Shown: positions 19,489-50,643 of the stretch, in pieces
Numbering within the stretch: position 1 is the stretch's first letter
How the letters are laid out: each line of letters opens with the position of its first letter
IMG/VR virus record: IMGVR_UViG_3300044701_003160
Span: 62,001-126,000 of that record
DNA: 64,000 nt
Reading direction: 5' to 3' (one strand)
Notes under the pieces: model-generated
Told to the model about the DNA's origin: nothing
What the model saw: the letters and a program-made list of their open reading frames with translations, nothing else
Database searches by the model: none
Position numbers and translations under genes: made by a program

Positions 19489-19527
19489 ATTTTACACAAA
19501 AAAAGGAAGGTTGTCAATCCTTCCTTT
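19489..19527 (-). terminator. Intrinsic terminator overlapping a sigma70 promoter
   Basis: GGAAGG-attgacaa-CCTTCC-T7; TTGACA(19512-19517)-N17-TAAAAT(19489-19494). Confidence 0.8.
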
Positions 19528-19532
19528 TGATT

Positions 19533-19634
19533 TTAGGCAACTTGGGGTTGCTTTGCCATATTCAATTGTGCGATATGAAGTAGTTTTTCTTTCTTATCTT
19601 TTTTCTTTAGATAACGAACAAAATAAGTATTCAT
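19533..19634 (-). CDS. Small basic peptide (33 aa)
   Basis: MNTYFVRYLKKKDKKEKLLHIAQLNMAKQPQVA; ATGA-coupled to upstream ORF. Confidence 0.55.
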   Translation of the reverse strand: MNTYFVRYLKKKDKKEKLLHIAQLNMAKQPQVA

Positions 19635-19765
19635 TTTTCTACCTCCTTCACAAACTTAACACCACGATAGGTTTCATTATATTGTTGAGGTTGTTGCTGG
19701 GCCTGCTGCTGCTGGCGGCGAATTTCGGTGTCATATTCAACACCACGATAAACGACTTTAGACAT
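19631..19765 (-). CDS. DUF4278-like small protein (44 aa)
   Basis: MSKVVYRGVEYD...QQQQAQQQPQQ...TYRGVKF: two YRGV motifs; AAGGAG RBS. Confidence 0.8.
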   Translation of the reverse strand: MSKVVYRGVEYDTEIRRQQQQAQQQPQQYNETYRGVKFVKEVEK

Positions 19766-19794
19766 TAGGGTTCTCCTTAGTTTTGAGTTAAAGA

Positions 19795-19893
19795 GCGTTC
19801 CTTCAGTCGGCGTTTGCGTTCGCTATTTGCGAATAGCGAATGAACGATCCGTTCCGCGTCGGCTTACTTCCGTCACATAATGTGATGAACGAT
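19795..19893 (-). ncRNA. Tandem glutamine riboswitch (glnA-type) candidate
   Basis: Two units each opening ATCGTTCA and closing GGAACG; first has GACGGAAGTA, second CCGACTGAAGGAACGC; hairpins TCACAT/ATGTGA and TTCGCTATT/AATAGCGAA; upstream of DUF4278. Confidence 0.75.
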
Positions 19894-19926
19894 ATTATTA
19901 TTTACCGGAAACTTTTGTATCTTTTG

Positions 19927-20253
19927 TTACCGTTCGATATAACTTAATGTATGATTGGTTGCAGATAACTGCTGAATGATTATATCACATCCAATCTTCG
20001 GTTGGCAATCGCCACAAGTATAAACATCTACCGCTGCTTTGCCCTCTTCAGGCCACGTATGAATGCTAATATGACTCTCTGAAAGTAAACATAAAACAGT
20101 AACTCCCTGAGGATCAAACTTTTTTGATATTGTTTGAACCACAGTAGCACCGCTTGCTGCTGCTGCGTTTTCTAATAAGTCTATAAGACAACGCTCGTCG
20201 TCCAAAAGGACAAACGAGCAACCGTACAGGTTTAAAAGATAATGCTTACCCAT
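19927..20253 (-). CDS. speD: S-adenosylmethionine decarboxylase proenzyme (pyruvoyl type)
   Basis: GKHYLLNLYGC; LSESHISIHTWPE.G.AAVDVYTCG. Confidence 0.9.
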   Translation of the reverse strand: MGKHYLLNLYGCSFVLLDDERCLIDLLENAAAASGATVVQTISKKFDPQGVTVLCLLSESHISIHTWPEEGKAAVDVYTCGDCQPKIGCDIIIQQLSATNHTLSYIER

Positions 20254-20459
20254 TAGTCTACAGAGTTTTCCTCTGCTTCTTTAATCAATTGACTGACATA
20301 ATTTTCAGTACCATCCATTGTCTTAACTGTAAACAAAGGAGACTTCATATACTTTTTAATTTTTTTATACTTCTTTAAAAGTTTATCAACTTCATTATCG
20401 TCAATTACAACTACTGCCTTACCATCTTTAAGTTTTTCGCCACCAAATCCTGCACTCAT
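20253..20459 (-). CDS. Hypothetical protein
   Basis: 68-aa ORF tightly packed in a co-directional run. Confidence 0.6.
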   Translation of the reverse strand: MSAGFGGEKLKDGKAVVVIDDNEVDKLLKKYKKIKKYMKSPLFTVKTMDGTENYVSQLIKEAEENSVD

Positions 20460-20761
20460 TTTCTTTTCTTTTTCTCTGGTTGTTTATATCCCCAAACTCT
20501 TGGGTTCGCTCTACCATATCCAAAATCAATTTTTTGAATTGCATCAGATCCGTATTGGTCGTAATACATATCAAAAATACGAACTCTTGATCCTCTTACA
20601 AGATCTATATGACTTTCCCCACATACAGTATACCAAATCAAATAGGCATCATTTGGGAATGAAGTATCCTTTGCCTTTTCAAGAGTAGTTTTTTCTAAGA
20701 GAACTTCACATCCATACTCGTGGGGCAGAACTTGTTTTTCTCTTTTTGAAGATTCTGCCAT
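20456..20761 (-). CDS. Hypothetical protein
   Basis: Likely ATG start MAESSKRE; overlapping stop/start with neighbours. Confidence 0.65.
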   Translation of the reverse strand: MAESSKREKQVLPHEYGCEVLLEKTTLEKAKDTSFPNDAYLIWYTVCGESHIDLVRGSRVRIFDMYYDQYGSDAIQKIDFGYGRANPRVWGYKQPEKKKRK

Positions 20762-20790
20762 TTTTTCTTTTTCTCCAACAACTACTGCCA

Positions 20791-21372
20791 TCAACGGTTA
20801 CCCCACTGAATATCAGAATATGCTTCCTTTACATTATCAAAAGATATCTTATATTTATCGGTTAGTTTCTTGTCTTTTGTAAGAATTAATACCTCTGCTT
20901 CTTTTGGATGAAGTCCTCTCAGAAGATTAATAAACATCATCTCTCTACGAATCGTTGTAAGACTATCGTTTCCACCTCTTACATAATGATAAAGATTTTG
21001 ATATTCTCTACGAAGTGATGTTTTACCTCTACCATCAAGATCTTGTCCTGTAGCTAATTCACCACCCTCTGCTTCCTTTCTCAGATTTTCAGAAAGAGTT
21101 CCAGAATAAACAGACTGTTCATCTGCATTTCCATAAGGAACATCTCCTTCAGGAAGAAGAGAGGATACTGATTCATCAAAGTTCCAAATAAAAATAGACT
21201 TCAGAGAATCGTGTTCATACGTTTTAAGGACTTCAATTTTTTTAGCATTACTTCTTTGTTTTGAAGCAAGCTCTAAGACCTCAAAAACAAATGGATTTGT
21301 TGGAAGAGTTTCAATCGGTTTTTCAATTGTTGTCTTTTTTGTCTTCGTCGTAGTCATAAATTTCAATTGCAA
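20791..21372 (-). CDS. Hypothetical T4-like protein
   Basis: 193-aa ORF (NPFVFEVLE...RREMMFINLLRGLHPKEAEVL) after CTAAATA late-type motif. Confidence 0.7.
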   Translation of the reverse strand: MQLKFMTTTKTKKTTIEKPIETLPTNPFVFEVLELASKQRSNAKKIEVLKTYEHDSLKSIFIWNFDESVSSLLPEGDVPYGNADEQSVYSGTLSENLRKEAEGGELATGQDLDGRGKTSLRREYQNLYHYVRGGNDSLTTIRREMMFINLLRGLHPKEAEVLILTKDKKLTDKYKISFDNVKEAYSDIQWGNR

Positions 21373-21402
21373 TATTATAGTTTAAGATATTTAGTGGTAT
21401 TT

Positions 21403-21627
21403 TTAATCCTCTTCTTCGTCTTCATCATCAAAGTATCCTTCCTCAAATCTAACAGAGACAACCTCATCAGGTATAATCTGTCCGTTCTCATCAAAGAATT
21501 CTGGATGTAAGTAAGGAGGTCTTGTTTCTAGCAAATGCCTATAAGTTAACCAACCAATTATACTTCCTACCATAAAAAAAAGCAACGTGAACATTACTGT
21601 GAATGCTATTACATATGCTGGTTCCAT
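21403..21627 (-). CDS. Small membrane protein
   Basis: N-terminal hydrophobic helix then HPEFFDENG and acidic tail. Confidence 0.7.
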   Translation of the reverse strand: MEPAYVIAFTVMFTLLFFMVGSIIGWLTYRHLLETRPPYLHPEFFDENGQIIPDEVVSVRFEEGYFDDEDEEED

Positions 21628-21645
21628 TTGTTTTCTCCAGAGAGT

Positions 21646-21870
21646 TTATTTTTTCTTAACGTCAAAGTGAAATTCAATAAAGAAATGAAACTCCCTTTGA
21701 AAGAGAGAAACCATTTTACCAAACTTCACTTGGAAAGTCTTTGGATTTAATGCTCTCTTCCTCCTATTGCGTAATAATAACTCAATTCCCCGATTAATTT
21801 CGGGTCCTGAGTTATTTAGTTTTCTTTTTTCGTCGTCCCCTTCTCTTATCATAGTTATACTTCCAGGCAT
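21646..21870 (-). CDS. Hypothetical protein (start uncertain)
   Basis: ORF track; fills gap between neighbours. Confidence 0.5.
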   Translation of the reverse strand: MPGSITMIREGDDEKRKLNNSGPEINRGIELLLRNRRKRALNPKTFQVKFGKMVSLFQREFHFFIEFHFDVKKK

Positions 21871-22171
21871 CTTCTAGGATGCAGTGCAAATAGTTTCGTA
21901 TTTTTCTTGCCTGAGGTTTTGGAATATGCCCATAGCCCTCACGAAGTTGTTTATGAATTTCGTCAGAACCACCTTCTAGATAATCATCAAGGTCCATTAT
22001 AAGACTACTGATTTCATTTGCAGTCTTACTTTCAATGAACTCCTCTACTTCAAATTTTCGTACACTCTTAATTTTCAGGTAATCGTAAAATTTTAACACA
22101 AACTGTCCATTAAAAGCAAGATCAATTGCTTTCTCTACATCAAAATAAACTTCGTGAAATGTACTTTCCAT
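21812..22171 (-). CDS. Hypothetical protein
   Basis: ATG at 22171 overlaps glutaredoxin stop (MESTFHEVYFDVEKAID...). Confidence 0.65.
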   Translation of the reverse strand: MESTFHEVYFDVEKAIDLAFNGQFVLKFYDYLKIKSVRKFEVEEFIESKTANEISSLIMDLDDYLEGGSDEIHKQLREGYGHIPKPQARKIRNYLHCILEDAWKYNYDKRRGRRKKKTK

Positions 22172-22410
22172 TAAACCAAATTTTGCTCCTTTAGATATTG
22201 AACCGTATCCATACAACCACCAAGATGTTCTTGATCATTTAAAATTACCTGAGGAAAGGTAGACCCTTCTCCAAACTCTGCATAGAATCCATCACGATCA
22301 AAGTTTTCCCCAAGAGTATAAACTACGTGTTCAAGATTTGCCAACTCTAACACTTGTTTGATTTTAGTGCAATAAGGGCAACCGTGTTTTGAATAAACTG
22401 TAAATTTCAT
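22171..22410 (-). CDS. Glutaredoxin (NrdC-like)
   Basis: CPYC active site; TFPQV; LGGC.D. Confidence 0.92.
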   Translation of the reverse strand: MKFTVYSKHGCPYCTKIKQVLELANLEHVVYTLGENFDRDGFYAEFGEGSTFPQVILNDQEHLGGCMDTVQYLKEQNLV

Positions 22411-22502
22411 AGTAGTATGAGTATTGGAATTAAAATTATGAGTATTGAAATTAGAAATCCCCCAGCCGTTTCTAGCAGGGGGCGAATACTGTAAGAGTCC
22501 AT
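22407..22502 (-). CDS. Small hydrophobic peptide (31 aa)
   Basis: MDSYSIRPLLETAGGFLISILIILIPILILL; stop overlaps glutaredoxin ATG (ATGA). Confidence 0.5.
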   Translation of the reverse strand: MDSYSIRPLLETAGGFLISILIILIPILILL

Positions 22503-22512
22503 CAATTAAATT

Positions 22513-22875
22513 TTATTGATATTTAGGGCGGTAGACGCTGTACTCAATATTATTAATCTGTTTTTGCCACTCAATAATATCAGACAATCTTTCTGTTGTA
22601 AAGAATGGTTGTTGTAAGTACCAATCATACCATTTTTGATGTCCCTTTGAGTGATTGCATTTTTTGCAAGCACATAAGACATTTGTAACCCTATCACTTC
22701 CACCTTTAGATCTTGGAACTATATGATCTAATGTAAGAACTTCATCACTCCCACAATATGCACATTCATAATTCCATCTTTCTTTAATTGATTGTCTCCA
22801 TTTTCGTCTTGCTTCTGAACTTGAGATCGCTTCAAGATTAAATAAAAGTTCTTCTGAAGTGGAGTAAAGTGGCAT
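22513..22875 (-). CDS. HNH endonuclease
   Basis: CAYCG...TLDHIVPRSKGGSD..TNVLCACKKCNHSKG. Confidence 0.9.
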   Translation of the reverse strand: MPLYSTSEELLFNLEAISSSEARRKWRQSIKERWNYECAYCGSDEVLTLDHIVPRSKGGSDRVTNVLCACKKCNHSKGHQKWYDWYLQQPFFTTERLSDIIEWQKQINNIEYSVYRPKYQ

Positions 22876-22919
22876 TCGTAAGATGCGTACCGCAAATATT
22901 TAGAGTTCCTTATGACTCA

Positions 22920-23192
22920 TCATACTTTAACAGGTTCTTGTTGTCCTTCTGGAAGTTTGATCTTATGGGGTTCCAATTGATTTACCTGACCAGCAGGCAA
23001 TCCAAGTTGTCCAGGGAGTTGCTTATCTGTTGTTGAGGTTACATTAATCACCTGATCCATTATAAAACGATGACGACTGTAAGAGCGATAATGAGGATCA
23101 AATCCAACCATCATTATCGCATCATTAATATCCGCACAATGGCAGATAACTTTTCCTGTTCGATTGTCTGTTACAACCCAATATTCATTCAT
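22920..23192 (-). CDS. Hypothetical protein
   Basis: 90-aa co-directional ORF. Confidence 0.65.
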   Translation of the reverse strand: MNEYWVVTDNRTGKVICHCADINDAIMMVGFDPHYRSYSRHRFIMDQVINVTSTTDKQLPGQLGLPAGQVNQLEPHKIKLPEGQQEPVKV

Positions 23193-23424
23193 TCTCAGGT
23201 GCCTTTGATGAAACTACAGGATTACGACTACGATTTTTGATAACAACAAATGCATCATTTTGATAAGTTACAGATCCAAAAGGTTTTGCCCACTTTGGAT
23301 TTGCATCGGGATGAGTTGCAGTTCCTGTAGCTGCAACTCCGCCAACTTCTACACGAATATCATCATCAATATTCCATCCCAAAGTTTCAATTGTAGTTGT
23401 GATTTGATTTAGTATATCGTCCAT
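23185..23424 (-). CDS. Hypothetical protein
   Basis: 79-aa ORF preceded by ATAAATA-like motif. Confidence 0.65.
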   Translation of the reverse strand: MDDILNQITTTIETLGWNIDDDIRVEVGGVAATGTATHPDANPKWAKPFGSVTYQNDAFVVIKNRSRNPVVSSKAPENE

Positions 23425-23460
23425 TATTTGTAGAAGTATTTCTATCAGTATAGAATACTT

Positions 23461-24822: not shown

Positions 24823-24852
24823 AATAATTTGACTCTGATATGATAAAGATAT

Positions 24853-25594: not shown

Positions 25595-25649
25595 TTAACA
25601 CTCTATTATTATTTATATAATATCATAGTTGGGGTCATAAGTCAATAAA

Positions 25650-25677
25650 AAGACCCCGAAGGGTCTTTGCGTTTCCG
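25650..25677 (-). terminator. psbD terminator, followed by TTGACT-N17-TATTAT promoter and TATAAATA
   Basis: AAGACCC-TTCG-GGGTCTT-TTT on the minus strand. Confidence 0.8.
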
Positions 25678-26818: not shown

Positions 26819-27343
26819 TTAGTGCTTATGCTTTTGTAGGTATCTAACTGCGTTGCTTAATGTATCTAAGTTGTCTCCAACCAATCCTAGCATTCTGTTG
26901 CAGTTGCTACAAAGCAATCCACGAACCTTTCCTGTCTTATGGTCGTGGTCCACATAAAGGTTATTACTATCCTTTCTACCATTTGTATTTGGATTAAAAC
27001 AAATAACACAAACTTCATTTTGTTCTTGTAGAAGGTTTTTATATTGCTCTAATCCAAAATCTTCACCATAAGTATATTTCAACATATAGTCTTTCTTATC
27101 GTCATAAGAAGGTCTCTTATCTTTATAGTCTTTACTATAACACTCTTTACACCTCTTATGACCTTTATAATATTCTGAAATAAGTTTTTCTACACCACAC
27201 TTGTTGCAGACGATATGAGTTTTACTCGCCCAGTTTTCTGCATAAGTTTTTTCTTCACATCTTATACACCTTCTACGACCTTCTCTAAAATCAGAGACAG
27301 AAAGTTCTTTGTTGCAACTTCTACAAATCTTCGTGGTTCTCAT
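26819..27343 (-). CDS. Endonuclease VII-like free-standing homing endonuclease (F-CphI-like)
   Basis: CVIC...LYVDHDHKTGKVRGLLCSNCNRMLG; two N-terminal CxxC repeats; between psbA and psbD. Confidence 0.85.
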   Translation of the reverse strand: MRTTKICRSCNKELSVSDFREGRRRCIRCEEKTYAENWASKTHIVCNKCGVEKLISEYYKGHKRCKECYSKDYKDKRPSYDDKKDYMLKYTYGEDFGLEQYKNLLQEQNEVCVICFNPNTNGRKDSNNLYVDHDHKTGKVRGLLCSNCNRMLGLVGDNLDTLSNAVRYLQKHKH

Positions 27344-27386
27344 TATGGTATTTAAACTTTTAACTATTTATAAAATATTAAACTCC

Positions 27387-27424
27387 ATTATAACACAAAA
27401 AAAGAGACCCGTAAAGGGTCTCTA
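27387..27424 (-). terminator. psbA terminator overlapping a promoter
   Basis: GAGACCC-tttac-GGGTCTC-T7; TTTACG-N17-TATAAT. Confidence 0.75.
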
Positions 27425-27430
27425 ATTTTA

Positions 27431-28947
27431 TCAACCGATTGAAGGAGCAGTGAGAGCAACTGGTGTTGCTTCTGCTGCTGCAAGGTCAAGTGGGAAGTTG
27501 TGCTTACAGTTTGGACTATATCTTCACCATACTCTTTATGAGGTTAGGTGTCGGACGCTATTGGTGTATTACATCTCACGCTTGAGAAACCACCTAGTCT
27601 CTGAACCTTCCAATCAAGTTCGTGATTGGCTTGGCTGCTGATTGCCCGTTAGGGTTTCCAGCAATTCATCCGAAGTTTATCTTACCTTTTCAGATAAGAG
27701 CGCCCACAAATCGAGCGTTGCGTTCATGCATGACTTCCATTCCAAGTCCTGCACGATTTAGGACATCTGCCCAAGTGTTAATAACTTTACCTTGACTATC
27801 AACGATAGACTGGTTGAAGTTGAAACCGTTGCACTGAACCCATAAGTTTACCATTCTTATGGAGTGGACTATATCTTCATCCATTTAGGATGTTGGGCGC
27901 TATTGGTGTATTACATCTCACGCTTGAGAAACCACCTAGTCTCTGAACCTTTCCAAGAAGCGTCTTGGACTTGGCTGCTGATTACCCAATATGGAGGGCT
28001 TCCAGCAATTCACCCAATGTTTACCGTCAAATTGCTAGGACGGGACCCCGACGATTGAGGTTAAATGCCATCGTAGAAACACCAAGAGCAGTGAACCAGA
28101 TGCCTACAACAGGCCAGGCAGCCAGGAAGAAGTGCAGTGAACGGGAGTTATTAAAGGAAGCATATTGAAAAATAAGGCGTCCAAAATACCCGTGAGCAGC
28201 AACGATGTTGTAGGTCTCTTCTTCTTGACCGAACTTATATCCGTAGTTCTGTGACTCATTCTCAGTAGTTTCACGAACCAGTGAAGAAGTCACCAGTGAA
28301 CCGTGCATAGCACTGAAGAGTGAACCACCGAACACACCAGCAACTCCAAGCATGTGGAAGGGGTGCATCAGGATATTGTGTTCTGCTTGGAAGACAAGCA
28401 TATAGTTAAACGTACCAGAGATACCAAGAGGCATCGCATCAGAGAAAGAACCTTGACCGAAAGGATAAACCAGGAATACGGCAGAAGCAGCAGCAACAGG
28501 TGCGCTGTAAGCAACACAGATCCAAGGACGCATACCTAGACGGTAAGAGAGTTCCCATTCACGTCCCATATAAGCATAGATGCCGATGAGGAAGTGAAAT
28601 ACAACGAGTTGGAAAGGTCCACCGTTATAAAGCCATTCATCAAGAGAAGCAGCTTCCCAGATAGGATAGAAGTGAAGTCCGATAGCATTAGAAGAAGGAA
28701 CAACGGCACCAGAGATGATGTTGTTTCCGTACATTAGAGAACCAGCAACTGGTTCACGAATGCCGTCGATGTCCACTGGGGGAGCACCAACGAAAGCGAT
28801 AATGAAGCAAGTCGTAGCAGCAAGCAGGCAAGGAATCATCAGGACTCCGAACCAACCAACATACAGACGATTGTTAGTGGAAGTAACCCACTCACAGAAT
28901 TGGTTCCAGGTATTTGTGGAACGTTGTTGAGCAATTGTAGCAGTCAT
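27431..28947 (-). CDS. psbA: Photosystem II D1 protein, three exons (28058-28947, 27714-27831, 27431-27502)
   Basis: Joined exons give 1080 nt = 359 aa + stop, restoring ...[12 protein letters not shown]...[14 protein letters not shown]... Confidence 0.97.
27503..27713 (-). mobile_element. Group I intron 2 of psbA (211 nt, no ORF), after codon A336
   Basis: 5' exon ends in U, intron ends in G; core elements TCAGAGACTA and AAGATATAGTCC; guide UUUGUGGGCG pairs exon 2 end and exon 3 start (CACAA). Confidence 0.93.
27832..28057 (-). mobile_element. Group I intron 1 of psbA (226 nt, no ORF), within codon L297
   Basis: Exon ...AACCU / intron ...CAGUG / exon CAACGG restores frame; core AGAGACTA and AAGATATAGTCC; guide GGGGU pairs ACCU. 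Confidence 0.9.
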
Positions 28948-28949
28948 TT

Positions 28950-29070
28950 GTTTTAAAAGGGTAAGTATGATTCAGGGGGACTGAATGGTTACAAGTATTC
29001 CCACGACACCCTCCATCGTGGGTATGAGGGATGCTTTACTTCTCGTGATCCCGGTTGGAGAAGATTCCGT
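28950..29070 (-). ncRNA. Structured psbA 5' leader (PhotoRC-II-like RNA motif)
   Basis: Hairpins CTTCTC/GAGAAG, CCCACGA/TCGTGGG and ATTCAG/CTGAAT between promoter and psbA ATG; family name from recall. Confidence 0.6.
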
Positions 29071-29112
29071 AGGTAAGAAATTGTTACATTCCTTAACCCC
29101 GTGTATGTATAT

Positions 29113-35072: not shown

Positions 35073-35110
35073 ATTATATAGGAAAAATAAAGGGGCGTCA
35101 AGCCCCTTAT
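35073..35110 (-). terminator. pstS terminator overlapping hli promoter
   Basis: AAGGGGC-ttgac-GCCCCTT-T-rich; TTGACG-N17-TATAAT. Confidence 0.8.
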
Positions 35111-35118: not shown

Positions 35119-36084
35119 TTACTGACCGATACGCTTCACGGCAAGTCGTGATTTATTAAGAATGCTACCTGCAAGAGGAACATAACCCAAATCATCAGCA
35201 ATCATTTGTGCCTTTGCACTCAGAGCATAGTTGAGTGCCTGTTGAATATCACCTGCTTTCCTAGCACTATTACCAGTCTTATAGGCAAGAACCCAAGTCA
35301 GAGTGGAGATAGGATATGCACCAGAGGCAGAAGGATTGGGATTTTCACCAGCAAGATTTGCATCCAGTTTAATGGAGTTAAGAGCAATAGCACCAGACTT
35401 AGCAGTAGGAAGAACAAACTGCCCTGCCTTATTTTGAAGAGCAGCAACTTGCAGTTTGTTCGACTTCACAAATCCAGTATTTACATAACCAATTGAACCA
35501 GCAGTTTGGCGAATTGTTCCAGAGACACCTTCGTTTCCTTTACCACCAAGACCAACGGGCCAATTGACGGACTTACCTACACCAGGTTTCCAACCACCAA
35601 AAGCATCCAGAGAGTTAGTGAATGCAAAAGTAGTTCCAGAACCATCAGAACGATGAACAACAGTCATAGGACCTGCAGCACATCCAACTTGCTTCCAATC
35701 ACGGATACGACCTGAGAAAATATCCACAGTTTGCTTCTGAGTGAGTTTCAGAGAGCATCCTGCTTTGTTATAGGCAATCGCAATCGTTCCACCCACCATA
35801 GGGATTTGAACGACACCACGCTTCACTTTAGATGCCTCTTTTGACGAGATAGGTTCGTCAGTTGCTCCGAAGTCAACTGTACCCGCAACGAATTGACGGA
35901 CACCAGCACCAGAACCAACCGACTGGTAGTTTACACGATTTCCAGATGATTGTGCATAATCTTGGAACCAACGCTGATAGAGAGGTGCAGGAAAGGTTGC
36001 ACCAGCACCATTAATAGGGGGTCCGGCAATTGCCGCAACAGGAGCAGCAACTAGACCAGCAGCAATAAGGTTTTTAAGTTTCAT
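35119..36084 (-). CDS. pstS: Phosphate-binding protein
   Basis: GAGATFPAPLY..W; YQSVGSGAG..QF; HRSDGSGTT; GKGNEGV; YPISTLTW. Confidence 0.95.
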   Translation of the reverse strand: MKLKNLIAAGLVAAPVAAIAGPPINGAGATFPAPLYQRWFQDYAQSSGNRVNYQSVGSGAGVRQFVAGTVDFGATDEPISSKEASKVKRGVVQIPMVGGTIAIAYNKAGCSLKLTQKQTVDIFSGRIRDWKQVGCAAGPMTVVHRSDGSGTTFAFTNSLDAFGGWKPGVGKSVNWPVGLGGKGNEGVSGTIRQTAGSIGYVNTGFVKSNKLQVAALQNKAGQFVLPTAKSGAIALNSIKLDANLAGENPNPSASGAYPISTLTWVLAYKTGNSARKAGDIQQALNYALSAKAQMIADDLGYVPLAGSILNKSRLAVKRIGQ

Positions 36085-36143
36085 AAAAATTTGTTTAGAA
36101 GTGAAATAGACTTCTTAGAAATCATAAGAGAAGATGAAAAATA

Positions 36144-36176
36144 AGTCCACTAAGATTTGGTTAAGAAGTTCATAAC
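36144..36176 (-). promoter_or_regulatory. Pho-box-like direct repeats upstream of pstS
   Basis: GTTATGA / CTTAACC / CTTAGTG at an 11-bp period. Confidence 0.55.
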
Positions 36177-36179
36177 ATA

Positions 36180-36208
36180 AAAAAGCACCCAAAGAATGGG
36201 TGCTTTCA
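36180..36208 (-). terminator. Porin terminator
   Basis: AAAGCACCCA-ttctt-TGGGTGCTTT-TTT. Confidence 0.8.
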
Positions 36209-36228
36209 CTCAGATTATGAGTAATTTA

Positions 36229-37710
36229 TCAGAAGGTGAACTTGGTCTGAACCACTCCACCCCAGGAAGATTCACCTCGGAACCTTTGGTCGTTGCTCAC
36301 ATAGAAGAGAGCAGGAGTGATGCTGATGTTATCAGATACACGATACTTATAGAAGATTTCAAGCATCGTGGCATCATCACCAATGAATTCAGAATTACCA
36401 GGTTGACCAACGGCAACACCAGCGGTATTACCTTGAGCAAATACATCAGACCACTGAAGTCCAACGAACCAAGAATCAGAATCGGTAGCACCAGTCTTAG
36501 AACCGTCACCACTTACACCATTGTAACCATAACCAGCTGAGATAGAAGGAACAAACCCACTCTCAGAAGGTTGCCAGTAAGCATTCAGAGCAACGCTATT
36601 GCTTTCCTGACCAGCAGCAAGGGCACCAGAACCGCCTCCAAGGGCATTAAAGGTACGAACACGACTGCCTTCAGTACCATAACGGTAAGCAACAGCAGCA
36701 CCCCACTGAGGAGCACGATAGCCAACCTGAGCAAGGAGGTTGATTCCAGAATCAGAGTTGAATGCACCTGTCTGAGAACTGTCACCATCTTGGGAAACAT
36801 AATTCAGACCAGCAACAAATCCACCTTGACCTTTCTTGGTGGGTTGCTTCCACTGAGCACCAACACCAGCACCAGTTGCCTTGTTATAAACACCAGAGGC
36901 ACCGCCAAGTTGGAAGAAGTCCAGGATTTCCGACTTATAAGCAGAAGGAACCCAAGCCATTTCCGTGTTACGAACCAGAGGACCAGCAGTCAGAGTTACA
37001 CTCTTACTAACTGGGAACTGATAGTAAAGACGGTCAATTGTAACCTGATCAGCAAGGGATTCTGCCTTATCAAGTTTGAACAGAGAAGAACTGGAACCAA
37101 AAGGATCGCTACTGAAGTTACCGGAACGCAGACGAGTGCGGAGCAGGTCCTTACCAGTGAACGAGGTATCAAAGTTCAGACGAACATCATAATTAAATGC
37201 AGTATTACCCACATCGACACCTTTGTTAGTTTCAAGACCAGGAACTCCACCAAGAACAAAGTTTACCTCACCCTTGAGTTTAGTTGTGGTGGAGAATTGT
37301 GTTGCTTCCAAGTTTCCAACACGATTTTCCAGACCATCAACACGACCCTTGAGTACGGCAAGTTCACTCTTGAATTCGTCCAGCAGTTTCCGAAGTTCAT
37401 CTGTAGTTTCAGTTACACGATCCAAGCAAGCATTCAGAAGAGCAGCTGCTTCATAACGGGTCATTGCCTGGCCACCAACAAAAGTGCCATTAGGATAACC
37501 AGCAACGCAACCATAACGCTCTACAAGATTGCTGAGTGCCTGATATGCCCAATCAGAAGGTTGAACATCAGTAAATTGTGTAATGCTAGTAACCTGGGCA
37601 GCAGAGGCATACTTGTTGACATCCTCAATATTGAGTTCTGCAGCATTCACCGCAGGAGCAACAAGACCCAGTGCAACAGGCACGAGCATCAGTTGTTTGA
37701 GAAAATTCAT
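36229..37710 (-). CDS. Cyanobacterial Som-type outer-membrane porin (SLH + carbohydrate-selective porin barrel)
   Basis: Signal peptide; SLH motif FTDVQPSDWAYQAL..LVERYGCVAGYPNGTF...TRYEAAA; coiled coil; FSTTTKL.GE; terminal ...TKFTF. Confidence 0.93.
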   Translation of the reverse strand: MNFLKQLMLVPVALGLVAPAVNAAELNIEDVNKYASAAQVTSITQFTDVQPSDWAYQALSNLVERYGCVAGYPNGTFVGGQAMTRYEAAALLNACLDRVTETTDELRKLLDEFKSELAVLKGRVDGLENRVGNLEATQFSTTTKLKGEVNFVLGGVPGLETNKGVDVGNTAFNYDVRLNFDTSFTGKDLLRTRLRSGNFSSDPFGSSSSLFKLDKAESLADQVTIDRLYYQFPVSKSVTLTAGPLVRNTEMAWVPSAYKSEILDFFQLGGASGVYNKATGAGVGAQWKQPTKKGQGGFVAGLNYVSQDGDSSQTGAFNSDSGINLLAQVGYRAPQWGAAVAYRYGTEGSRVRTFNALGGGSGALAAGQESNSVALNAYWQPSESGFVPSISAGYGYNGVSGDGSKTGATDSDSWFVGLQWSDVFAQGNTAGVAVGQPGNSEFIGDDATMLEIFYKYRVSDNISITPALFYVSNDQRFRGESSWGGVVQTKFTF

Positions 37711-37773
37711 AAATGTGTTTTTTTGTTAAACGACAAGTGTTAAGAATTATAACTAATTCTCAACAACGTATTT

Positions 37774-45115: not shown

Positions 45116-45769
45116 TCAAATATTAAATTTTTCCTTAATTTCTTCTATAAGATCAGAATTATTTGATGCAACACCAAGCCCAGCAGAATTTGTAAAATTG
45201 ACTTTAGGAACTTCTAATTGAGAAAAGAAAACTCCAACACCATCAGGATTTGAAATAGTATCGTGAAAAATAATTACACCATTTTCTTTCAGGAATGGTG
45301 ACCAAGTATCACAATCATTTTTACAATTTTCATAATCATGAAGTCCATCAATATGTAAAAGATCTATTTCTTTATCCCACTCTTTTGCAACATCATCAAA
45401 ATAACCTTTAATAATTTCAAGATTATCTAACTTTAATTTATTCTTAACATCCAACACAAATTGATAGTCTTCATCTATCCTAATACCATGCTTTGTATTA
45501 TCAAAACAATCAATACCATAAACTTTCCCTTTATTGTTTAGAGACATTAAGAATGAAGAATATCCATAATCAACTCCAAGTTCAACCGTAACTTGAGGAT
45601 CAATTTTTTCAATCAACCAAGATACAAATTCGTTGTGACTCTTTGGAGGAACATTCCATGCGGATGGAATTGCACCCAAAATTTCACTCACATTATCATC
45701 ATCAAGGGAAAGAACATATTCTCTCCAATTATCTCTTTTATTTTCACACCAAGAAAAATTTTCAATCAT
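45116..45769 (-). CDS. Class I SAM-dependent methyltransferase
   Basis: VELGVDYGYS; GIDCF; IDLLHIDGLHDYE...D...W; IFHD. Confidence 0.88.
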   Translation of the reverse strand: MIENFSWCENKRDNWREYVLSLDDDNVSEILGAIPSAWNVPPKSHNEFVSWLIEKIDPQVTVELGVDYGYSSFLMSLNNKGKVYGIDCFDNTKHGIRIDEDYQFVLDVKNKLKLDNLEIIKGYFDDVAKEWDKEIDLLHIDGLHDYENCKNDCDTWSPFLKENGVIIFHDTISNPDGVGVFFSQLEVPKVNFTNSAGLGVASNNSDLIEEIKEKFNI

Positions 45770-46805: not shown

Positions 46806-46839
46806 AGTTTATTTTCTAAGTTCATTTATATAGTATAGA

Positions 46840-47658
46840 TCAAGTAGATAATATTTGCAATCCCTTTTCGATAGTCATCTCATATGAAAAATTAAAATCT
46901 TTTAATTTTTTATTATTCAAAGTCATGTTTTTAACTTGAATGAATTTTTGATTGTCTGGGAATGCAACATCAATTATTTTACTTTGACTTCCAGTTAATT
47001 CTTTTGCAGTTTCAATAAGTTCACGAAAAGTGAAAGAAGTGCCAGAGGCAATGTTGTAAATCTCATTTACATTACCTTTATCCAAAACTACCTTAATTGC
47101 TCTACAAATATCCTCAACATACATATAATCTTTTAAAAAATTACCACCATCATAAAGTTGAATATCTTTATTTTGTTTGAGAAGATTAATCATGTATCCA
47201 AGAACATTCTTACCTAAAGAAACTGTTTTATCTAATCCATAAACATTCCCAATCCTTAGAATCCTATACTTAACTCCAAAAGTTTCACAAAAAGATATTA
47301 ACAGTTGTTCAGCACATCGTTTGGTGATGGAATAAAACCCAGTAGGATTGCAACAGTCCGTTTCTTTGGCATCTATGACATCATTACCATAAACAAATCC
47401 AGAACTGATAAAATTAAAGACAATATCTTTACTCTTACAATTTTTAAGGACATCAACAAACAAACTCAAGTTAGTATCAATATCAATATGTAAGTCTTTA
47501 AAAACACTTTGATTTGTTGTTGTGCTAATGAAATAAAGAACTTGTTGAGTTTCAAAGTTTCTACTTTCCTTTGGAACTAACACCACATCTTTTGGATAAA
47601 GATTACAGAAAGTCCCACCAATAAATCCTGTTCCACCAAAGACTGATATCTTATTCAT
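46840..47658 (-). CDS. NAD-dependent epimerase/dehydratase
   Basis: GGTGFIG; FISSGFVYG; YSITK; RIGNVYG. Confidence 0.88.
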   Translation of the reverse strand: MNKISVFGGTGFIGGTFCNLYPKDVVLVPKESRNFETQQVLYFISTTTNQSVFKDLHIDIDTNLSLFVDVLKNCKSKDIVFNFISSGFVYGNDVIDAKETDCCNPTGFYSITKRCAEQLLISFCETFGVKYRILRIGNVYGLDKTVSLGKNVLGYMINLLKQNKDIQLYDGGNFLKDYMYVEDICRAIKVVLDKGNVNEIYNIASGTSFTFRELIETAKELTGSQSKIIDVAFPDNQKFIQVKNMTLNNKKLKDFNFSYEMTIEKGLQILST

Positions 47659-48190
47659 ACTTCTCACATTCTTCAAATGAAAGACCTTTCATATCTTTCT
47701 CAGACATAATAGGGTCAAAATAATTTCCCCAGTTGATATTCAAGTCTGGGTCATTCCACATTAAAGTTCTTTCGTGTTCTTTGTATTGATAATCAGTAAC
47801 CTTATAAAGAACCTCTACTCTTTCGGTCAGAGCTTTAAATCCGTGAGCGAATCCTGGGGGAACCCACAATTCAAGTTCTCCTGGGGAAAGTTTGTAAGCA
47901 GTCCATTGTCCGAATGTAGGAGAACTTTTGCGAAGATCAACAATCACATCATAAATTTCTCCAACCAAACAACGGACAATTTTACCCTGAGGATGTTGAA
48001 TCTGATAATGAAGACCTCTTACAACATTCTTTACAGATACTGAATGACAATCCTGAACGAACTTATATGGTCCGATGATTTTTTCAATCTCACGAAGATT
48101 GAAAGACTCTGTAAAAGAACCTCTGTTGTCACAAAAAATATTTGTAGTAATTAAATATGCGTCTTTTAGTTTAGTTCCAATTGCGTTCAT
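47651..48190 (-). CDS. rfbC: dTDP-4-dehydrorhamnose 3,5-epimerase
   Basis: DNRGSFTE; FVQD.HS.S...VRGLHYQ; VDLRK.SPTFGQW; PPGFAHGF. Confidence 0.93.
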   Translation of the reverse strand: MNAIGTKLKDAYLITTNIFCDNRGSFTESFNLREIEKIIGPYKFVQDCHSVSVKNVVRGLHYQIQHPQGKIVRCLVGEIYDVIVDLRKSSPTFGQWTAYKLSPGELELWVPPGFAHGFKALTERVEVLYKVTDYQYKEHERTLMWNDPDLNINWGNYFDPIMSEKDMKGLSFEECEKYE

Positions 48191-49097
48191 ACCAGTTAAT
48201 CGTGTGTTCTAATCCTTGTTCTATAGTAAATCGTGGAGACCATCCTAATTCTTGGCGAATCTTAGTAATATCTGTAGAGTATCTACGGTCGTGCCCTGGC
48301 CTATCATTTACATATTTTATCATACTTTCATCCATATTCATATGACCTAAAATCATATGGACTAGGTTAATATTCTCAATTTCACACTCTCCACCAATAT
48401 TATACTTCTCCCCCACTCTACCGTTCATCCAGACCTGACACAATGCCTCACAGTGGTCTTGAACGTATAGCCAATCACGAACTTGTTTTCCATCGCCATA
48501 AACAGGAACTTTCTTACCTTGCTTGAGATTTGTGATTGCTTTAGGAATCATCTTCTCCACGAACTGCCTAGGTCCGTAGTTGTTAGAGCAGTTTGTAATT
48601 ATTGCTGGAAATCCATACGTGTTGTGATATGCCATTACAAAGTGGTCTGATGCTGCCTTAGAAGCAGAGTATGGGTTGCGTGGAGCATAGTTAGAGTTCT
48701 CTGTAAATTTTCCCTCTTCTATAGACCCATAGATTTCATCAGTAGAGATATGAATAAACTTTTCTACTGCATACTTCAAAGATAGATTTAATAGATTAAC
48801 AGTTCCCGAAATGTTTGTATGAATAAAAGGTGAACAATCTTCTATTGAATTATCCACATGACTTTCTGCAGCCAAGTGAAAAACTACATTTGGTCTATGT
48901 TTTTTAAATATAAAATCACAATTATATTGATCTACAATATCAGTTGTATAAAACTTTACTTGATCGGGAATATTGTTCCAATCAGCAGCATAAGTCAATT
49001 TGTCGATACAAATTACTTCTTCATCAAATGTTTTTACTAAATGATGAAGTAAATTACTACCAATAAATCCTGCACCACCTGTTACTAGAATAGTCAT
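48171..49097 (-). CDS. rfbB: dTDP-glucose 4,6-dehydratase
   Basis: TGGAGFIGS; HLAAESHVD; HISTDE.YG; PYSASKA; NCSNNYGP; DRPGHDRRY. Confidence 0.93.
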   Translation of the reverse strand: MTILVTGGAGFIGSNLLHHLVKTFDEEVICIDKLTYAADWNNIPDQVKFYTTDIVDQYNCDFIFKKHRPNVVFHLAAESHVDNSIEDCSPFIHTNISGTVNLLNLSLKYAVEKFIHISTDEIYGSIEEGKFTENSNYAPRNPYSASKAASDHFVMAYHNTYGFPAIITNCSNNYGPRQFVEKMIPKAITNLKQGKKVPVYGDGKQVRDWLYVQDHCEALCQVWMNGRVGEKYNIGGECEIENINLVHMILGHMNMDESMIKYVNDRPGHDRRYSTDITKIRQELGWSPRFTIEQGLEHTINWYERNWN

Positions 49098-49109
49098 ATT
49101 ATTTTAACT

Positions 49110-49958
49110 TCACATCATATTTTTTAATTGAGAGAATACTTTAGATATTCCCTCTTGTATATTAGTTTTGGGTTGCCACCATTTAATTATAAATGTATCT
49201 GGTCGATTTCTTTTGTCTAACTGAACAGTATCCTTTTCTTCTGATGGAACTACTTTTACACCATGTTTGCCGATTAAATTAAATTGACCCACAATAATTG
49301 AAGCAACATCAATAATCTTAGTTGAATTAAAACTTGTAATGTGAAGTTTATCTTCTGGACGAAACTCATTATAGTTTAACATAATTGTTTCTAATGCCTC
49401 GCAACAATCTTCAGCATATAAAAACTCTCTTTCTTCTTGACCATCAGTAAGCATATCAATTACGCCAGTCTCAAAACCTTTTTTAATAAAATCACTAATT
49501 ACGTGAGACTTTTCTAGATCACTCTCAATTCCATAAACATTCCAGAAATGAACAGTAAGACCTTGAAGGGTTTGGGTATAAAGTTCTCCTACTCGTTTCA
49601 TTACACCATAAGGAGAATAACTCATATTACTCATTTGAGATGAAGCAAACACGAATTTCTTTTTATACTTCTCAAGTAGTTCAAAAACATTCACCATCAA
49701 TCTTGCATTATTATTAATAAAGTCAAATGTGTGTTGATATTTTTTAAGGTAGCGAGATCCACCAACATCAAATGCAAGGAAGAATACAAAATCTGCATCC
49801 TCAATTACTTTATTAAGCTCCAGATTAGGAATAATTCTCATATCCTGATGTTCACCGTTTAAAATATCAAACTCATGAACTTGATGATTTTTATTGCGAA
49901 AATATTCAGTTAGATATTTTCCTATTTGTCCCGATGACCCTAAAATAGTAATCTTCAT
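49110..49958 (-). CDS. NAD-dependent epimerase/dehydratase
   Basis: GSSGQIG; FASSQMS; YGVMK; GQEEREFLYAED. Confidence 0.85.
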   Translation of the reverse strand: MKITILGSSGQIGKYLTEYFRNKNHQVHEFDILNGEHQDMRIIPNLELNKVIEDADFVFFLAFDVGGSRYLKKYQHTFDFINNNARLMVNVFELLEKYKKKFVFASSQMSNMSYSPYGVMKRVGELYTQTLQGLTVHFWNVYGIESDLEKSHVISDFIKKGFETGVIDMLTDGQEEREFLYAEDCCEALETIMLNYNEFRPEDKLHITSFNSTKIIDVASIIVGQFNLIGKHGVKVVPSEEKDTVQLDKRNRPDTFIIKWWQPKTNIQEGISKVFSQLKNMM

Positions 49959-49981
49959 TTATTGAAAGTATTCTCAATATT

Positions 49982-50020
49982 ATTATACAAAAAAAGTAGA
50001 GTTTAGTCAACTCTACTTTT
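49982..50020 (-). terminator. Terminator/promoter cassette heading the glycan operon
   Basis: GTAGAG-ttgactaaa-CTCTAC-T7; TTGACT-N17-TATAAT. Confidence 0.85.
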
Positions 50021-50077
50021 AGATTACACTAATTTTCTAAAAACTACGCGGTAGTAAGTGCCAAGTAACTAGTATAG

Positions 50078-50590
50078 TCACAATTGATCATTTTTAAGTA
50101 AATATTTTTCCAATAATTCTGGAGAATATTGTTGAGGAGTTTCGATAATTTGTTTTTGTTCTCTTTTTTCTTTTTCTAAAAGATAAACACGATTTCGAAT
50201 TTCTGTTGAAGAATATTGGTGCCTTCGCAAATGATAATAAATTTGAATTCCATTATCAATACAATACTGTTTTCCAGTTACTTCGATATGGCGATATTCT
50301 TCACTTAAGAAACGAATGTGAAATGTTTGTGTCTGAATTAAATTTAACAAATCTGCTTCAGTTTCATACACTAAAATTTCATCAACATATTTACATCCTT
50401 GCAGTTGTACATAGCGTTCATAAGCAGACTGCACTGGTTTATTTTTAATTCCGGGTCGGTCTATCGTAGGATCTATTTGAAGTGCGACTTTCAGATAATC
50501 ACATAGTTCCCTTTCCATTCTAAGCATAGTTACATGCCCAGCATGAAATAAATCAAATGAGCTACAATTAAATCCTATTTTCATATACAA
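50078..50590 (-). CDS. Cytidylyltransferase (TagD / glycerol-3-phosphate CT-like)
   Basis: SSFDLFHAGH (HxGH); ER...L..CKYVDE; YSSTEIR. Confidence 0.88.
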   Translation of the reverse strand: MYMKIGFNCSSFDLFHAGHVTMLRMERELCDYLKVALQIDPTIDRPGIKNKPVQSAYERYVQLQGCKYVDEILVYETEADLLNLIQTQTFHIRFLSEEYRHIEVTGKQYCIDNGIQIYYHLRRHQYSSTEIRNRVYLLEKEKREQKQIIETPQQYSPELLEKYLLKNDQL

Positions 50591-50604
50591 GATGTTTTCA
50601 TACT

Positions 50605-50643
50605 ATTATACAAAAAAAGGAGAGTTTAGTCAACTCTCCTTTA
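50605..50643 (-). terminator. Second near-identical terminator/promoter cassette
   Basis: GGAGAG-ttgactaaa-CTCTCC-T7; TTGACT-N17-TATAAT. Confidence 0.85.

What the first reader, a model, noticed from the sequence alone, without database searches (positions are those of the whole stretch)
19489..50643. Recurrent fused terminator-promoter cassette (-35 box in the terminator loop, U-tract as spacer)
Seen five times on the minus strand with 17-bp spacing: 19489-19527 (TTGACA/TAAAAT), 27387-27424 (TTTACG/TATAAT), 35073-35110 (TTGACG/TATAAT), 49982-50020 and 50605-50643 (TTGACT/TATAAT). The stems differ in sequence but keep the geometry. Inference: a ~40-bp insulator that ends the upstream transcript and restarts host-polymerase transcription, making accessory modules portable.
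Basis: partly seen in the sequence, partly recalled or inferred. Interest (0 to 1): 0.65.

Follow-up and report, generated by a model that had tools for sequence, protein, structure and literature searches.

The report
Fused terminator-promoter cassettes in a cyanophage
Five short intergenic elements in this T4-like cyanophage each nest a host-type promoter inside a transcription terminator; the design is real and conserved in related phages, but it is the cyanophage version of the "PeSL" cassettes already known from other T4-like phages.

Summary
All five sites exist as described. Each is a GC-rich hairpin (-12 to -16.5 kcal/mol) whose loop carries TTGAC-like letters. A T6-7 run follows, then a TATAAT-like box exactly 17 nt after the -35. 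All lie on the coding strand between genes.

This is not chance. My detector finds 6 in the genome against 0.7 per shuffled genome, and 90 in 1.54 Mb of related phage contigs against 2 after shuffling.

Matching positions in relatives keep the geometry while the stems change by compensatory substitutions. Best reading: an intrinsic terminator fused to a sigma-70-type early promoter. It ends the upstream transcript, and the new transcript starts past the hairpin.

The cassettes sit beside accessory genes:
- psbA to a homing endonuclease
- pstS to hli
- small ORFs downstream of speD to ORF51/thyX
- wcaG RNA to sugar genes

They also coincide with homology breakpoints. Sites 4 and 5 are a 43-nt direct repeat around one cytidylyltransferase gene.

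The kind is known: PeSLs (Arbiol 2010; Comeau 2014), including a subclass whose stem-loop overlaps the -35. New here are the fixed geometry in cyanomyoviruses, parallel terminator/late-promoter fusions, and a conserved terminator plus promoter after the wcaG "riboswitch candidate". No transcript data exist, so function is inferred.

The parts
19489..19528 (-). Site 1. Hairpin 19501-19528 (10 pairs, loop ATTGACAA), T7, -35 TTGACA 19512-19517, -10 TAAAAT 19489-19494. Lies between small ORFs downstream of speD and ORF51+thyX.
   Evidence: -12.5 kcal/mol, z -3.1. Neighbouring genes. Matching cassettes with different stems lie upstream of ORF51 homologues in IMG/VR contigs.
27387..27423 (-). Site 2. 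Hairpin 27403-27423 (8 pairs, loop TTTAC), T7, -35 TTTACG, TGT-extended -10 TATAAT 27387-27392. It is the terminator of psbA and the promoter of a 174-aa endonuclease VII-type homing endonuclease, followed by psbD.
   Evidence: -16.5 kcal/mol, z -6.1. psbA C-terminus and its two group I introns. Endonuclease_7 and Photo_RC domains. psbA 3' ends in 65 unique relatives nearly all show a terminator, and a subset carry a -35 in the loop.
27365..27372 (-). TATAAATA (T4-type late-promoter consensus), 15 nt downstream of the site 2 -10 box. The homing-endonuclease gene would then have both an early and a late start.
   Evidence: Read directly. The same TATAAT ... ATAAATAG arrangement appears in relatives (L218, L243, L247, L248, L255).
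35073..35110 (-). Site 3. Hairpin 35090-35108 (7 pairs, loop TTGAC), T-rich run, -35 TTGACG, -10 TATAAT 35073-35078. Lies between pstS and two hli genes plus a peroxiredoxin.
   Evidence: -12.0 kcal/mol, z -3.6. The same design follows pstS in dozens of contigs, and the hairpin type tracks the downstream gene. The hli-type cassette also lies upstream of hli03 in S-SM2 and in S-SKS1, in other contexts.
49982..50020 (-). Site 4. Hairpin 49992-50020 (12 pairs, loop GACTA), T7, -35 TTGACT, -10 TATAAT. Lies between the tagD-like ORF170 and a 282-aa NAD epimerase. It is the lower copy of a 43-nt direct repeat (49977-50019).
   Evidence: -13.8 kcal/mol, z -5.3. Pfam.
50605..50642 (-). Site 5. Hairpin 50616-50642 (11 pairs, loop GACTA), T7, -35 TTGACT, -10 TATAAT. 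It lies 6 nt after the wcaG RNA and upstream of ORF170. It is the upper copy of the direct repeat (50600-50642; 93% identical, and the two stem differences compensate each other).
   Evidence: -15.1 kcal/mol, z -4.9. Conserved in S-SRM01, S-SM2 and S-SKS1 and in 42 of 55 unique wcaG loci. Stem covariation.
50649..50747 (-). wcaG RNA (Rfam RF01761), ended by the site 5 hairpin.
   Evidence: 98.1 bits against a gathering score of 42, full length.
50078..50590 (-). ORF170, a cytidylyltransferase (tagD-like), bracketed by the two cassette copies.
   Evidence: Pfam CTP_transf_like. Repeat spacing 623 nt. In ten relatives the same gene is followed by an overlapping rmlB-type start, not by a cassette.
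50041..50081 (-). Junction scar. About 18 nt match the start of the rmlB-type gene that follows tagD in relatives (about 50064-50081). Then comes a decayed piece resembling the 3' half of wcaG (50041-50058), directly upstream of site 4.
   Evidence: Local alignment 15/18, reached by 11 of 1000 shuffles. The Rfam model does not detect it, so this part is tentative.
25617..25668 (-). Unfused tandem version after psbD: a terminator (AAAGACCC-TTCG-GGGTCTTT) followed by TTGACT-17-TATTAT starting 6 nt after the stem.
35119..37710 (-). Porin (OprB/SLH) plus pstS block, whose downstream edge is site 3. It sits in a different genomic place in close relatives.
   Evidence: Pfam. BLAST of relatives L126, L127 and L137 against the window: homology ends at 35125-35127 in all three, and in L137 it starts at 37711.

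Best explanation
Each site is a composite regulatory cassette: a Rho-independent terminator fused with a sigma-70 (cyanobacterial SigA)-type early promoter.

On RNA made from upstream, the GC-rich hairpin plus U-tract ends the transcript. On DNA, the same 40 bp hold the promoter. The loop supplies the -35, the 3' arm and the T-run form the 17-nt spacer, and the -10 follows the T-run. The A-rich 5' arm lies where UP-like AT-rich DNA sits in T4-type early promoters.

Transcripts started here begin about 7 nt past the -10, so they lack the hairpin and are not terminated by it. The element therefore resets transcription between neighbouring same-strand genes. The downstream gene gets its own early expression level, insulated from its neighbour.

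These downstream genes are mostly accessory: a homing endonuclease with psbD, hli, thyX and sugar genes.

Shown here: the sequence anatomy, its non-random frequency, stem covariation, and conservation of the boxes and spacing. Inferred: actual termination, actual initiation by host polymerase, and early timing.

A second, less certain layer is that the unit (cassette plus gene, or wcaG plus cassette) behaves as a module in genome shuffling, as proposed for PeSLs.
For: - Anatomy and energies.
- Enrichment: 6 against 0.7 per shuffled genome. 90 hits (66 unique, 56 of them at exactly 17 nt) in 1.54 Mb of related contigs against 2 after shuffling.
- Six of 24 strong coding-strand terminators are fused.
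- Covariation at the wcaG site across 37 sequences: 92% of cells paired, and 51 double-sided changes against 14.7 in shuffles (0 of 500 reach it). Sliding the partner columns drops pairing to 36-72%.
- Of 55 unique wcaG loci, 42 keep the hairpin, T-run and -10. TATAAT is exact in 36 of them and the spacing is 17 nt in 39. There are 35 different stem arms and more than 20 different downstream gene starts.
- The same design follows pstS, psbA and speD, or precedes ORF51, in relatives with other stems. It also occurs in the cultured phages S-SM2, S-SKS1 and S-SRM01.
- Modularity: after pstS the hairpin type follows the downstream gene. Homology to three relatives ends at the pstS stop, and to L081 and L137 just past site 5. 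Metagenome contigs diverge at 50605 and 50653. A 43-nt direct repeat surrounds ORF170.
- Precedent: PeSL promoter and terminator activities were shown experimentally in RB49/phi1 (PMC2839356).
Against: - No transcript ends or starts could be examined, because no RNA run holds this phage.
- The -35 is weak at site 2 (TTTACG). In most wcaG loci it is TTGCAT, only 3/6. Many psbA terminators in relatives have a plain TTCG loop with only a -10 behind them. The -35 may therefore be dispensable, or the promoter weak.
- Sites 1-3 share no sequence beyond the boxes, so homologous recombination between them is unlikely.
- The listed joints in the metagenome contigs show no form lacking ORF170.
- Breakpoints at gene ends are also expected from faster intergenic divergence alone.
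Confidence: 0.75

Rival explanations
1. Compaction only. Terminators and promoters are independent elements that overlap because intergenic space is minimal. The nested geometry is simply the only way to overlap them. The cassettes play no part in moving genes.
For: Stems at sites 1-3 are unrelated in sequence. An unfused tandem version exists after psbD. The T-run is also fused to late promoters, which suggests general economy. No deletion form between sites 4 and 5 was listed.
Against: The cassette co-travels with hli and with the MSLISQRD-type gene into different neighbourhoods. wcaG plus cassette is kept while more than 20 different genes follow it. Homology breaks at sites 3 and 5. The pstS downstream junction varies more (hli in 36 of 76) than the porin-pstS junction (kept in 51 of 64). 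There is a 43-nt repeat around ORF170 and a scar upstream of site 4.
Confidence: 0.35
2. At site 5 the hairpin is the expression platform of a wcaG riboswitch that controls the sugar genes by termination, and the promoter-like boxes behind it are not used.
For: The hairpin starts 6 nt after the wcaG motif. It accompanies the motif in 49 of 55 unique loci. wcaG was proposed as a cis-regulatory riboswitch candidate (PMC2864571).
Against: TATAAT is exact in 36 of 42 loci and always 17 nt from TTG, while the DNA after it is unrelated (alignment). The terminator 5' arm pairs with its own aptamer no better than with aptamers of other loci (-8.26 against -8.09 kcal/mol, p = 0.23), so there is no covarying antiterminator. 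The same geometry occurs at four sites without any wcaG.
Confidence: 0.12
3. The hairpins are not terminators. They would be mRNA 3'-end stabilisers or processing sites, or DNA palindromes bound by a regulator over the -35.
For: A palindrome centred on the -35 could be an operator. Hairpins also protect 3' ends.
Against: The arms covary freely in sequence while only complementarity is kept, which argues for nucleic-acid structure and against a protein site. Every hairpin is followed at once by T6-7, the defining mark of intrinsic terminators. Stabilising the 3' end is part of what a terminator hairpin does, so that is not a true alternative.
Confidence: 0.07
4. Chance matches in AT-rich intergenic DNA.
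For: Single promoter-like matches are no commoner than in shuffles.
Against: The composite pattern is about 9 times (genome) and 45 times (related loci) more frequent than in shuffles, and it is conserved at matching positions.
Confidence: 0.01

Closest known systems
PeSLs (promoter-early stem-loops) of T4-like phages RB49/phi1, PST/T4 and nt-1/KVP40 (Arbiol et al. 2010, PMC2839356; Comeau et al. 2014, PMC4122927)
   Same: Both are small intergenic composites of a sigma-70-type early promoter with N17 spacing and a stem-loop that terminates upstream transcription. Both sit beside variable or accessory genes of a T4-like genome and near indels and replacements. One of the five described subclasses has the stem-loop overlapping the -35. 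The nt-1 stems (A3-4 G3 - loop - C3 T3-4) look like the ones here.
   Different: - Here the geometry is fixed: -35 in the loop and U-tract as spacer. In RB49/phi1 the stem-loop position varies, and in PST and nt-1 it lies just upstream of the promoter.
- Copies within this genome are mostly unrelated in sequence; only sites 4 and 5 are alike. PeSLs are described as conserved over about 100 bp.
- There are few per genome (6-7).
- No Shine-Dalgarno block is present.
- The cassette can be tied to a structured RNA (wcaG).
- The only cyanophage paper in the held library that mentions PeSLs found few in S-PM2 (PMC4503421).
Morons of lambdoid phages (promoter-gene-terminator units)
   Same: An accessory gene carries its own transcription signals and is insulated from its neighbours. 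This comparison comes from the discussion in PMC2839356.
   Different: Morons have a separate promoter and terminator at the two ends of the gene, and are often on the opposite strand. Here one 40-bp element does both jobs at the 5' side, on the same strand as the flanking genes.
wcaG RNA motif, a riboswitch candidate (Weinberg et al. 2010, PMC2864571; Rfam RF01761)
   Same: Site 5 lies directly 3' of a full-length wcaG RNA upstream of sugar-nucleotide genes, the gene association described for the motif.
   Different: The main text of that paper mentions no conserved terminator or promoter behind the motif. Here 76% of unique loci have both. This separates the RNA from the genes it was assumed to control in cis.

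Membership tests
PeSL (promoter-early stem-loop cassette) | Sigma-70-like -35 and -10 boxes with about 17-nt spacing | tested here: met
   10-11 of 12 consensus letters and a 17-nt spacer at all five sites.
PeSL (promoter-early stem-loop cassette) | Stable stem-loop within or next to the promoter, able to terminate upstream transcription | tested here: met
   Hairpins of -12 to -16.5 kcal/mol followed by T6-7; covariation. Termination itself was not assayed.
PeSL (promoter-early stem-loop cassette) | Intergenic position between same-strand ORFs, from the upstream stop to the downstream start codon | tested here: met
   All five lie between a minus-strand stop (or RNA end) and an ATG 14-44 nt past the -10.
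PeSL (promoter-early stem-loop cassette) | [quoted passage not shown] | tested here: inconclusive
   The 5' arms begin with A2-4 runs (AAAAGG, AAAGG, AAGG, AGAG) and the flanks are AT-rich. No quantitative test was made.
PeSL (promoter-early stem-loop cassette) | Preferential location in hyperplastic regions, beside variable or accessory genes | tested here: met
   Five of the six detected lie within 32 kb rich in auxiliary genes: psbA/psbD, hli, pstS, thyX, speD, sugar genes and tRNAs. No formal map of core against variable genes was made.
PeSL (promoter-early stem-loop cassette) | Copies within one genome similar enough, over tens of bases, to recombine with each other | tested here: not met
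   Only sites 4 and 5 are alike (43 nt, 93%). Sites 1, 2 and 3 share only the hexamers and the T-run.
PeSL (promoter-early stem-loop cassette) | Association with insertions, deletions or replacements between close relatives | tested here: met
   Homology to L126, L127 and L137 ends at the pstS stop, and homology to L081 and L137 ends just past site 5. Contigs diverge at 50605 and 50653. Different genes follow one conserved cassette. ORF170 is bracketed by repeats, with a scar.
PeSL (promoter-early stem-loop cassette) | Mini-circle formation, and measured promoter and terminator activity | not testable with these tools
   Needs inverse PCR and reporter assays, as in PMC2839356.
Rho-independent (intrinsic) terminator | GC-rich stem, short loop, then a U-tract directly after; RNA 3' ends in the tract | tested here: met
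   Structure and tract are met. 3' ends are not testable, because there are no RNA runs.
wcaG riboswitch expression platform (site 5 only) | Mutually exclusive pairing between the aptamer and the terminator stem that covaries with it | tested here: not met
   Own-locus duplex energy is -8.26 against -8.09 kcal/mol for swapped loci, p = 0.23, n = 40. This does not exclude a generic G-rich/C-rich alternative pairing.

The most novel reading that the evidence does not exclude
The nesting may be more than economy. In cyanomyoviruses the terminator's release point (the U-tract) lies inside the next promoter, at about -25 to -14. Polymerase freed from the upstream transcript could then be handed directly to the downstream promoter, coupling termination to re-initiation. 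The same 40-bp unit, with its gene or with the wcaG RNA, would be the joint at which auxiliary metabolic gene modules are exchanged between phages. A corollary is that wcaG is a terminated, stand-alone or 3'-end RNA, and not a 5'-UTR riboswitch of the sugar genes.
Probability: 0.15. Interest if true: 0.7.

Novelty: new member of a known kind. Interest (0 to 1): 0.42.

Why it matters
It extends the PeSL idea to the ecologically dominant T4-like cyanophages. Auxiliary metabolic genes (psbA, hli, pstS, sugar genes) are known to be patchily distributed there, but the joints of exchange are not defined.

It gives a simple, searchable signature for early transcription units and module borders in cyanophage genomes and metagenomes.

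It also raises a concrete doubt about how the orphan wcaG riboswitch candidate works. In three quarters of loci a conserved terminator and promoter stand between the RNA and the genes it is thought to regulate.

For synthetic biology, a 40-bp stop-and-restart part that has been conserved across many cyanophage genomes, presumably under selection, is a ready candidate insulator for cyanobacteria.

Tried and rejected
- **Transcript evidence.** The one run search found only DNA metagenomes, mostly freshwater, and no RNA run. Start and end mapping was therefore impossible.
- **Laying contigs of four runs on 47501-53500.** This showed contig breaks and divergence at the cassette and at wcaG. No joint listed among the 15 best removes ORF170; 26 further joints were not shown.
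- **Rfam search of the stretch upstream of site 4.** At E up to 10 it gave no wcaG hit. The "decayed wcaG half" therefore rests only on a 15/18 local match with p of about 0.01.
- **Megablast against phage records.** It found no close relative. Relatives had to be reached through distant BLAST, a wcaG word and flanking proteins.
- **The Syn9 transcriptome paper (Doron 2016).** It is not in the held library. What I recall of its early-promoter motif is memory only and is not used as evidence.
- **Pattern TTKAC..T5..TAWWAT in three cultured genomes.** Two of the eight hits (L370, L371) have no hairpin and were discarded.
- **Antiterminator test for wcaG.** Negative.
- **Not used.** Protein-structure, complex and large protein searches were not used, because the question does not rest on any protein.

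Full report
**What the window is.** The window is bases 62001-126000 of a single 219,018-bp contig with 35.7% G+C. Nearly all genes are on the minus strand. Gene content marks a T4-like cyanomyovirus: psbA, psbD, hli, pstS, thyX, speD, a tRNA cluster and nucleotide-sugar genes. It has only distant nucleotide relatives among deposited phages. The runs that hold most of the queried stretch (0.83-0.86 of its words) are freshwater metagenomes.

**Check of the observation.** All five sites are present as described.
- Each has a GC-rich stem of 7-12 pairs and a 5-8 nt loop holding TTGAC-like letters.
- The 3' arm runs into T6-7, with an interrupted T-run at site 3. A TATAAT-like box starts exactly 17 nt after the -35 hexamer.
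- Folding gives -12.0 to -16.5 kcal/mol, with z-scores of -3.1 to -6.1.
- All lie on the coding strand between genes. The next ATG is 14-44 nt past the -10.

**Is it more than chance?** Single promoter-like matches are not enriched, but the composite is.
- A detector that demands -35-in-loop, T-run and -10 finds 6 on the minus strand. One weak 9/12 hit falls on the plus strand. The mean is 0.7 in 30 dinucleotide-shuffled genomes, both strands together.
- The sixth site is at genome 3855-3826. A seventh has a longer, branched loop at genome 138827-138800.
- Of 24 strong intrinsic terminators on the coding strand, 6 carry the fused early promoter. One has an early promoter just behind it (25617-25668). 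Three run straight into TATAAATA.

**Surroundings of each site.**
- Site 1 follows small ORFs downstream of speD and precedes a 51-aa ORF and thyX.
- Site 2 is the terminator of psbA. The psbA gene here is split by two group I introns and preceded by a PhotoRC-II RNA. The promoter half of site 2 serves an endonuclease VII-type free-standing homing endonuclease and then psbD. A TATAAATA box lies 15 nt past the -10.
- Site 3 lies between pstS and two hli genes plus a peroxiredoxin.
- Site 5 begins 6 nt after a full-length wcaG RNA (98 bits) and precedes a tagD-like cytidylyltransferase, ORF170.
- Site 4 follows that gene and precedes an NAD epimerase.

**Conservation.**
- The wcaG-plus-site-5 unit aligns with S-SRM01, S-SM2 and S-SKS1. 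In each it stands directly upstream of a different first sugar gene.
- A 14-nt wcaG word fetched 120 viral contigs. Of 55 unique true wcaG loci, 42 have the hairpin, T-run and a -10 of at least 5/6. Within those 42, TATAAT is exact in 36 and the distance from TTG to the -10 is 17 nt in 39. There are 35 different 5' arms and more than 20 different downstream gene starts.
- On an independent MAFFT alignment of 37 such cassettes, 92% of cells pair. Five pairs show compensatory changes, with 51 double-changed cells against 14.7 in shuffles (0 of 500 reach it). Sliding the partner column drops pairing to 36-72%.
- After pstS, dozens of contigs carry the same design, and the hairpin type follows the downstream gene. 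hli has a GGGGC-TTGAC-GCCCC type with CCTATATAAT. A gene starting MSLISQRD has a GGGGGG-TTGACAA-CCCCCC type with TGTATTAT. A gene starting MKINLWYC has a third type.
- The hli-type cassette recurs upstream of hli03 in S-SM2 behind an unrelated gene. It also occurs in S-SKS1, upstream of an unannotated 79-aa ORF with the same N-terminus (MTVTT...).
- psbA is followed by a strong terminator in nearly all of 65 unique relatives. A subset put TTGACA, TTTACA or TTGCAA in the loop. Others keep a TTCG loop with only a -10, or a late box, behind it.
- Site 1 has counterparts with other stems upstream of ORF51 homologues. In one relative the speD stop codon lies inside the -35.
- Over 1.54 Mb of these loci the detector finds 90 cassettes, 66 of them unique and 56 of those at 17 nt. 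After shuffling it finds 2.

**Mechanism.** Three features mark RNA structure followed by a U-tract, that is an intrinsic terminator, and not a protein-binding palindrome. The arms vary freely, complementarity is kept, and the T-run is invariant. The invariant spacing and the -10, with unrelated sequence after them, mark a promoter.

The two functions act on different molecules and do not conflict. Transcripts from upstream contain the hairpin. Transcripts from the fused promoter start beyond it. This is inference from sequence, because no RNA data exist for this phage. Both activities were measured for PeSLs of RB49/phi1 (PMC2839356).

**Modularity.**
- Three relatives share 80-90% DNA identity over the pstS region up to the pstS stop (window 35125-35127). 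In L137 the shared block starts at 37711, the porin start. They then continue with other cassettes and genes. In L127/L081 and L137 this block lies next to or within the tRNA region, and their homology around wcaG ends at 50566, just past site 5.
- Metagenome contigs diverge at 50605 and 50653. Summed depth jumps from about 90 to about 1700 there, which shows that many co-occurring phages share wcaG plus cassette but not what follows.
- The pstS downstream junction is hli in 36 of 76 loci. The porin-pstS junction is kept in 51 of 64.
- Sites 4 and 5 are a 43-nt direct repeat, 93% identical and 623 nt apart. The two stem differences compensate each other.
- In ten relatives tagD is followed by an overlapping rmlB-type start. 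The window keeps only about 18 nt of that start, then a weak trace of the wcaG 3' half, then site 4 (not confirmed by Rfam).

These facts fit cassette-bounded exchange, but they do not prove that recombination occurs in the cassettes. Sites 1-3 are too unlike each other to recombine with one another.

**Comparison with what is known.** The kind is known: PeSLs, composite promoter-terminator motifs of T4-like phages. Five positional subclasses are described, one of which overlaps the -35, and a role in modular shuffling has been proposed.
- In the held library PeSLs are mentioned for a cyanophage only once, to say they are sparse in S-PM2.
- Sullivan et al. 2010 noted promoters and terminators flanking pstS, with "no single regulatory solution".

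I file the finding as a new member of that kind. One defining feature is not met: the copies within this genome are not similar to each other. The stereotyped nesting is its own mark.

**wcaG.** The motif was proposed as a cis-acting riboswitch candidate for the downstream genes. A conserved terminator and promoter between it and those genes, together with the lack of any covarying antiterminator, suggest another reading. It may be a discrete terminated RNA, or the end of the upstream transcript; the nearest strong upstream promoter is at 51341-51369. This is a lead, not a conclusion.

**Verdict.** The mechanism is well supported by comparative sequence evidence but is untested at the RNA level.

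Noticed in passing
G000:C1 minus strand, near 155541-155515, 132725-132695 and 127110-127080 (outside the window); also loci L229, L246, L270, L150: Strong terminators run straight into TATAAATA, the T4-type late promoter, 6-7 nt after the last G/C of the stem. This holds for 3 of 24 strong terminators, although the whole minus strand has only 16 TATAAATA. Eleven unique examples occur in related contigs. The T-run seems to be shared with late promoters as well.
   Followed up: partly
window 50649-50747 and 50748-50842 (-); loci L004-L123: The wcaG RNA is followed by a terminator and a TATAAT box in 42 of 55 unique loci. It is often preceded by one to three related units (hairpin, then TAAAA.., then CTGGTGGAGTCA..GACCC or CCTGGTCGGGATGG..). 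The real RNA may therefore be longer and multi-domain, and may not be a 5'-UTR switch.
   Followed up: partly
window 27430-29076 (-): psbA is interrupted by two group I introns (27840-28067 and 27491-27723) and preceded by a PhotoRC-II RNA (28987-29076). A free-standing endonuclease VII-type homing endonuclease gene (26819-27343) lies between psbA and psbD, as in S-PM2.
   Followed up: partly
window 35119-37710 (-): An OprB/SLH porin gene and pstS form one block with a plain terminator between them (36181-36207). In relatives L127 and L137 the same block lies next to or inside the tRNA cluster region, so a whole phosphate-uptake module has moved.
   Followed up: partly
L333:about 2290-2340 (+), upstream of its thyX match: In this relative the TGA stop codon of speD lies inside the TTGAC of the -35 in the loop, and the 5' arm of the hairpin is coding sequence. 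This is extreme overlap of coding, terminator and promoter signals.
   Followed up: no
window 55519-55555 (-): Rfam abiF RNA match (44.9 bits against a gathering score of 37) at the edge of the tRNA cluster.
   Followed up: no
G000:C1:138800-138850 (-); S-SM2 121633-121683; S-SRM01 157811-157861: A conserved variant cassette downstream of hsp20. A long-range stem (GAGGAG/CTCCTC type) encloses an inner hairpin (CTGG..CCAG), with TTGAC next to the 3' arm, then T7 and TATAAT.
   Followed up: partly
window 51341-51400 (-): A hairpin without a T-run (AGACACTT..AAGTGTCT) sits directly upstream of a TTGACT-17-TATAAT promoter. That promoter would drive two small ORFs and the wcaG RNA.
   Followed up: no
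window 50501-52900: In four metagenome runs (labelled freshwater), summed contig depth over wcaG, the small ORFs and the tRNAs is 10-40 times that of the flanking sugar genes. This stretch is therefore shared by many co-occurring phages.
   Followed up: no
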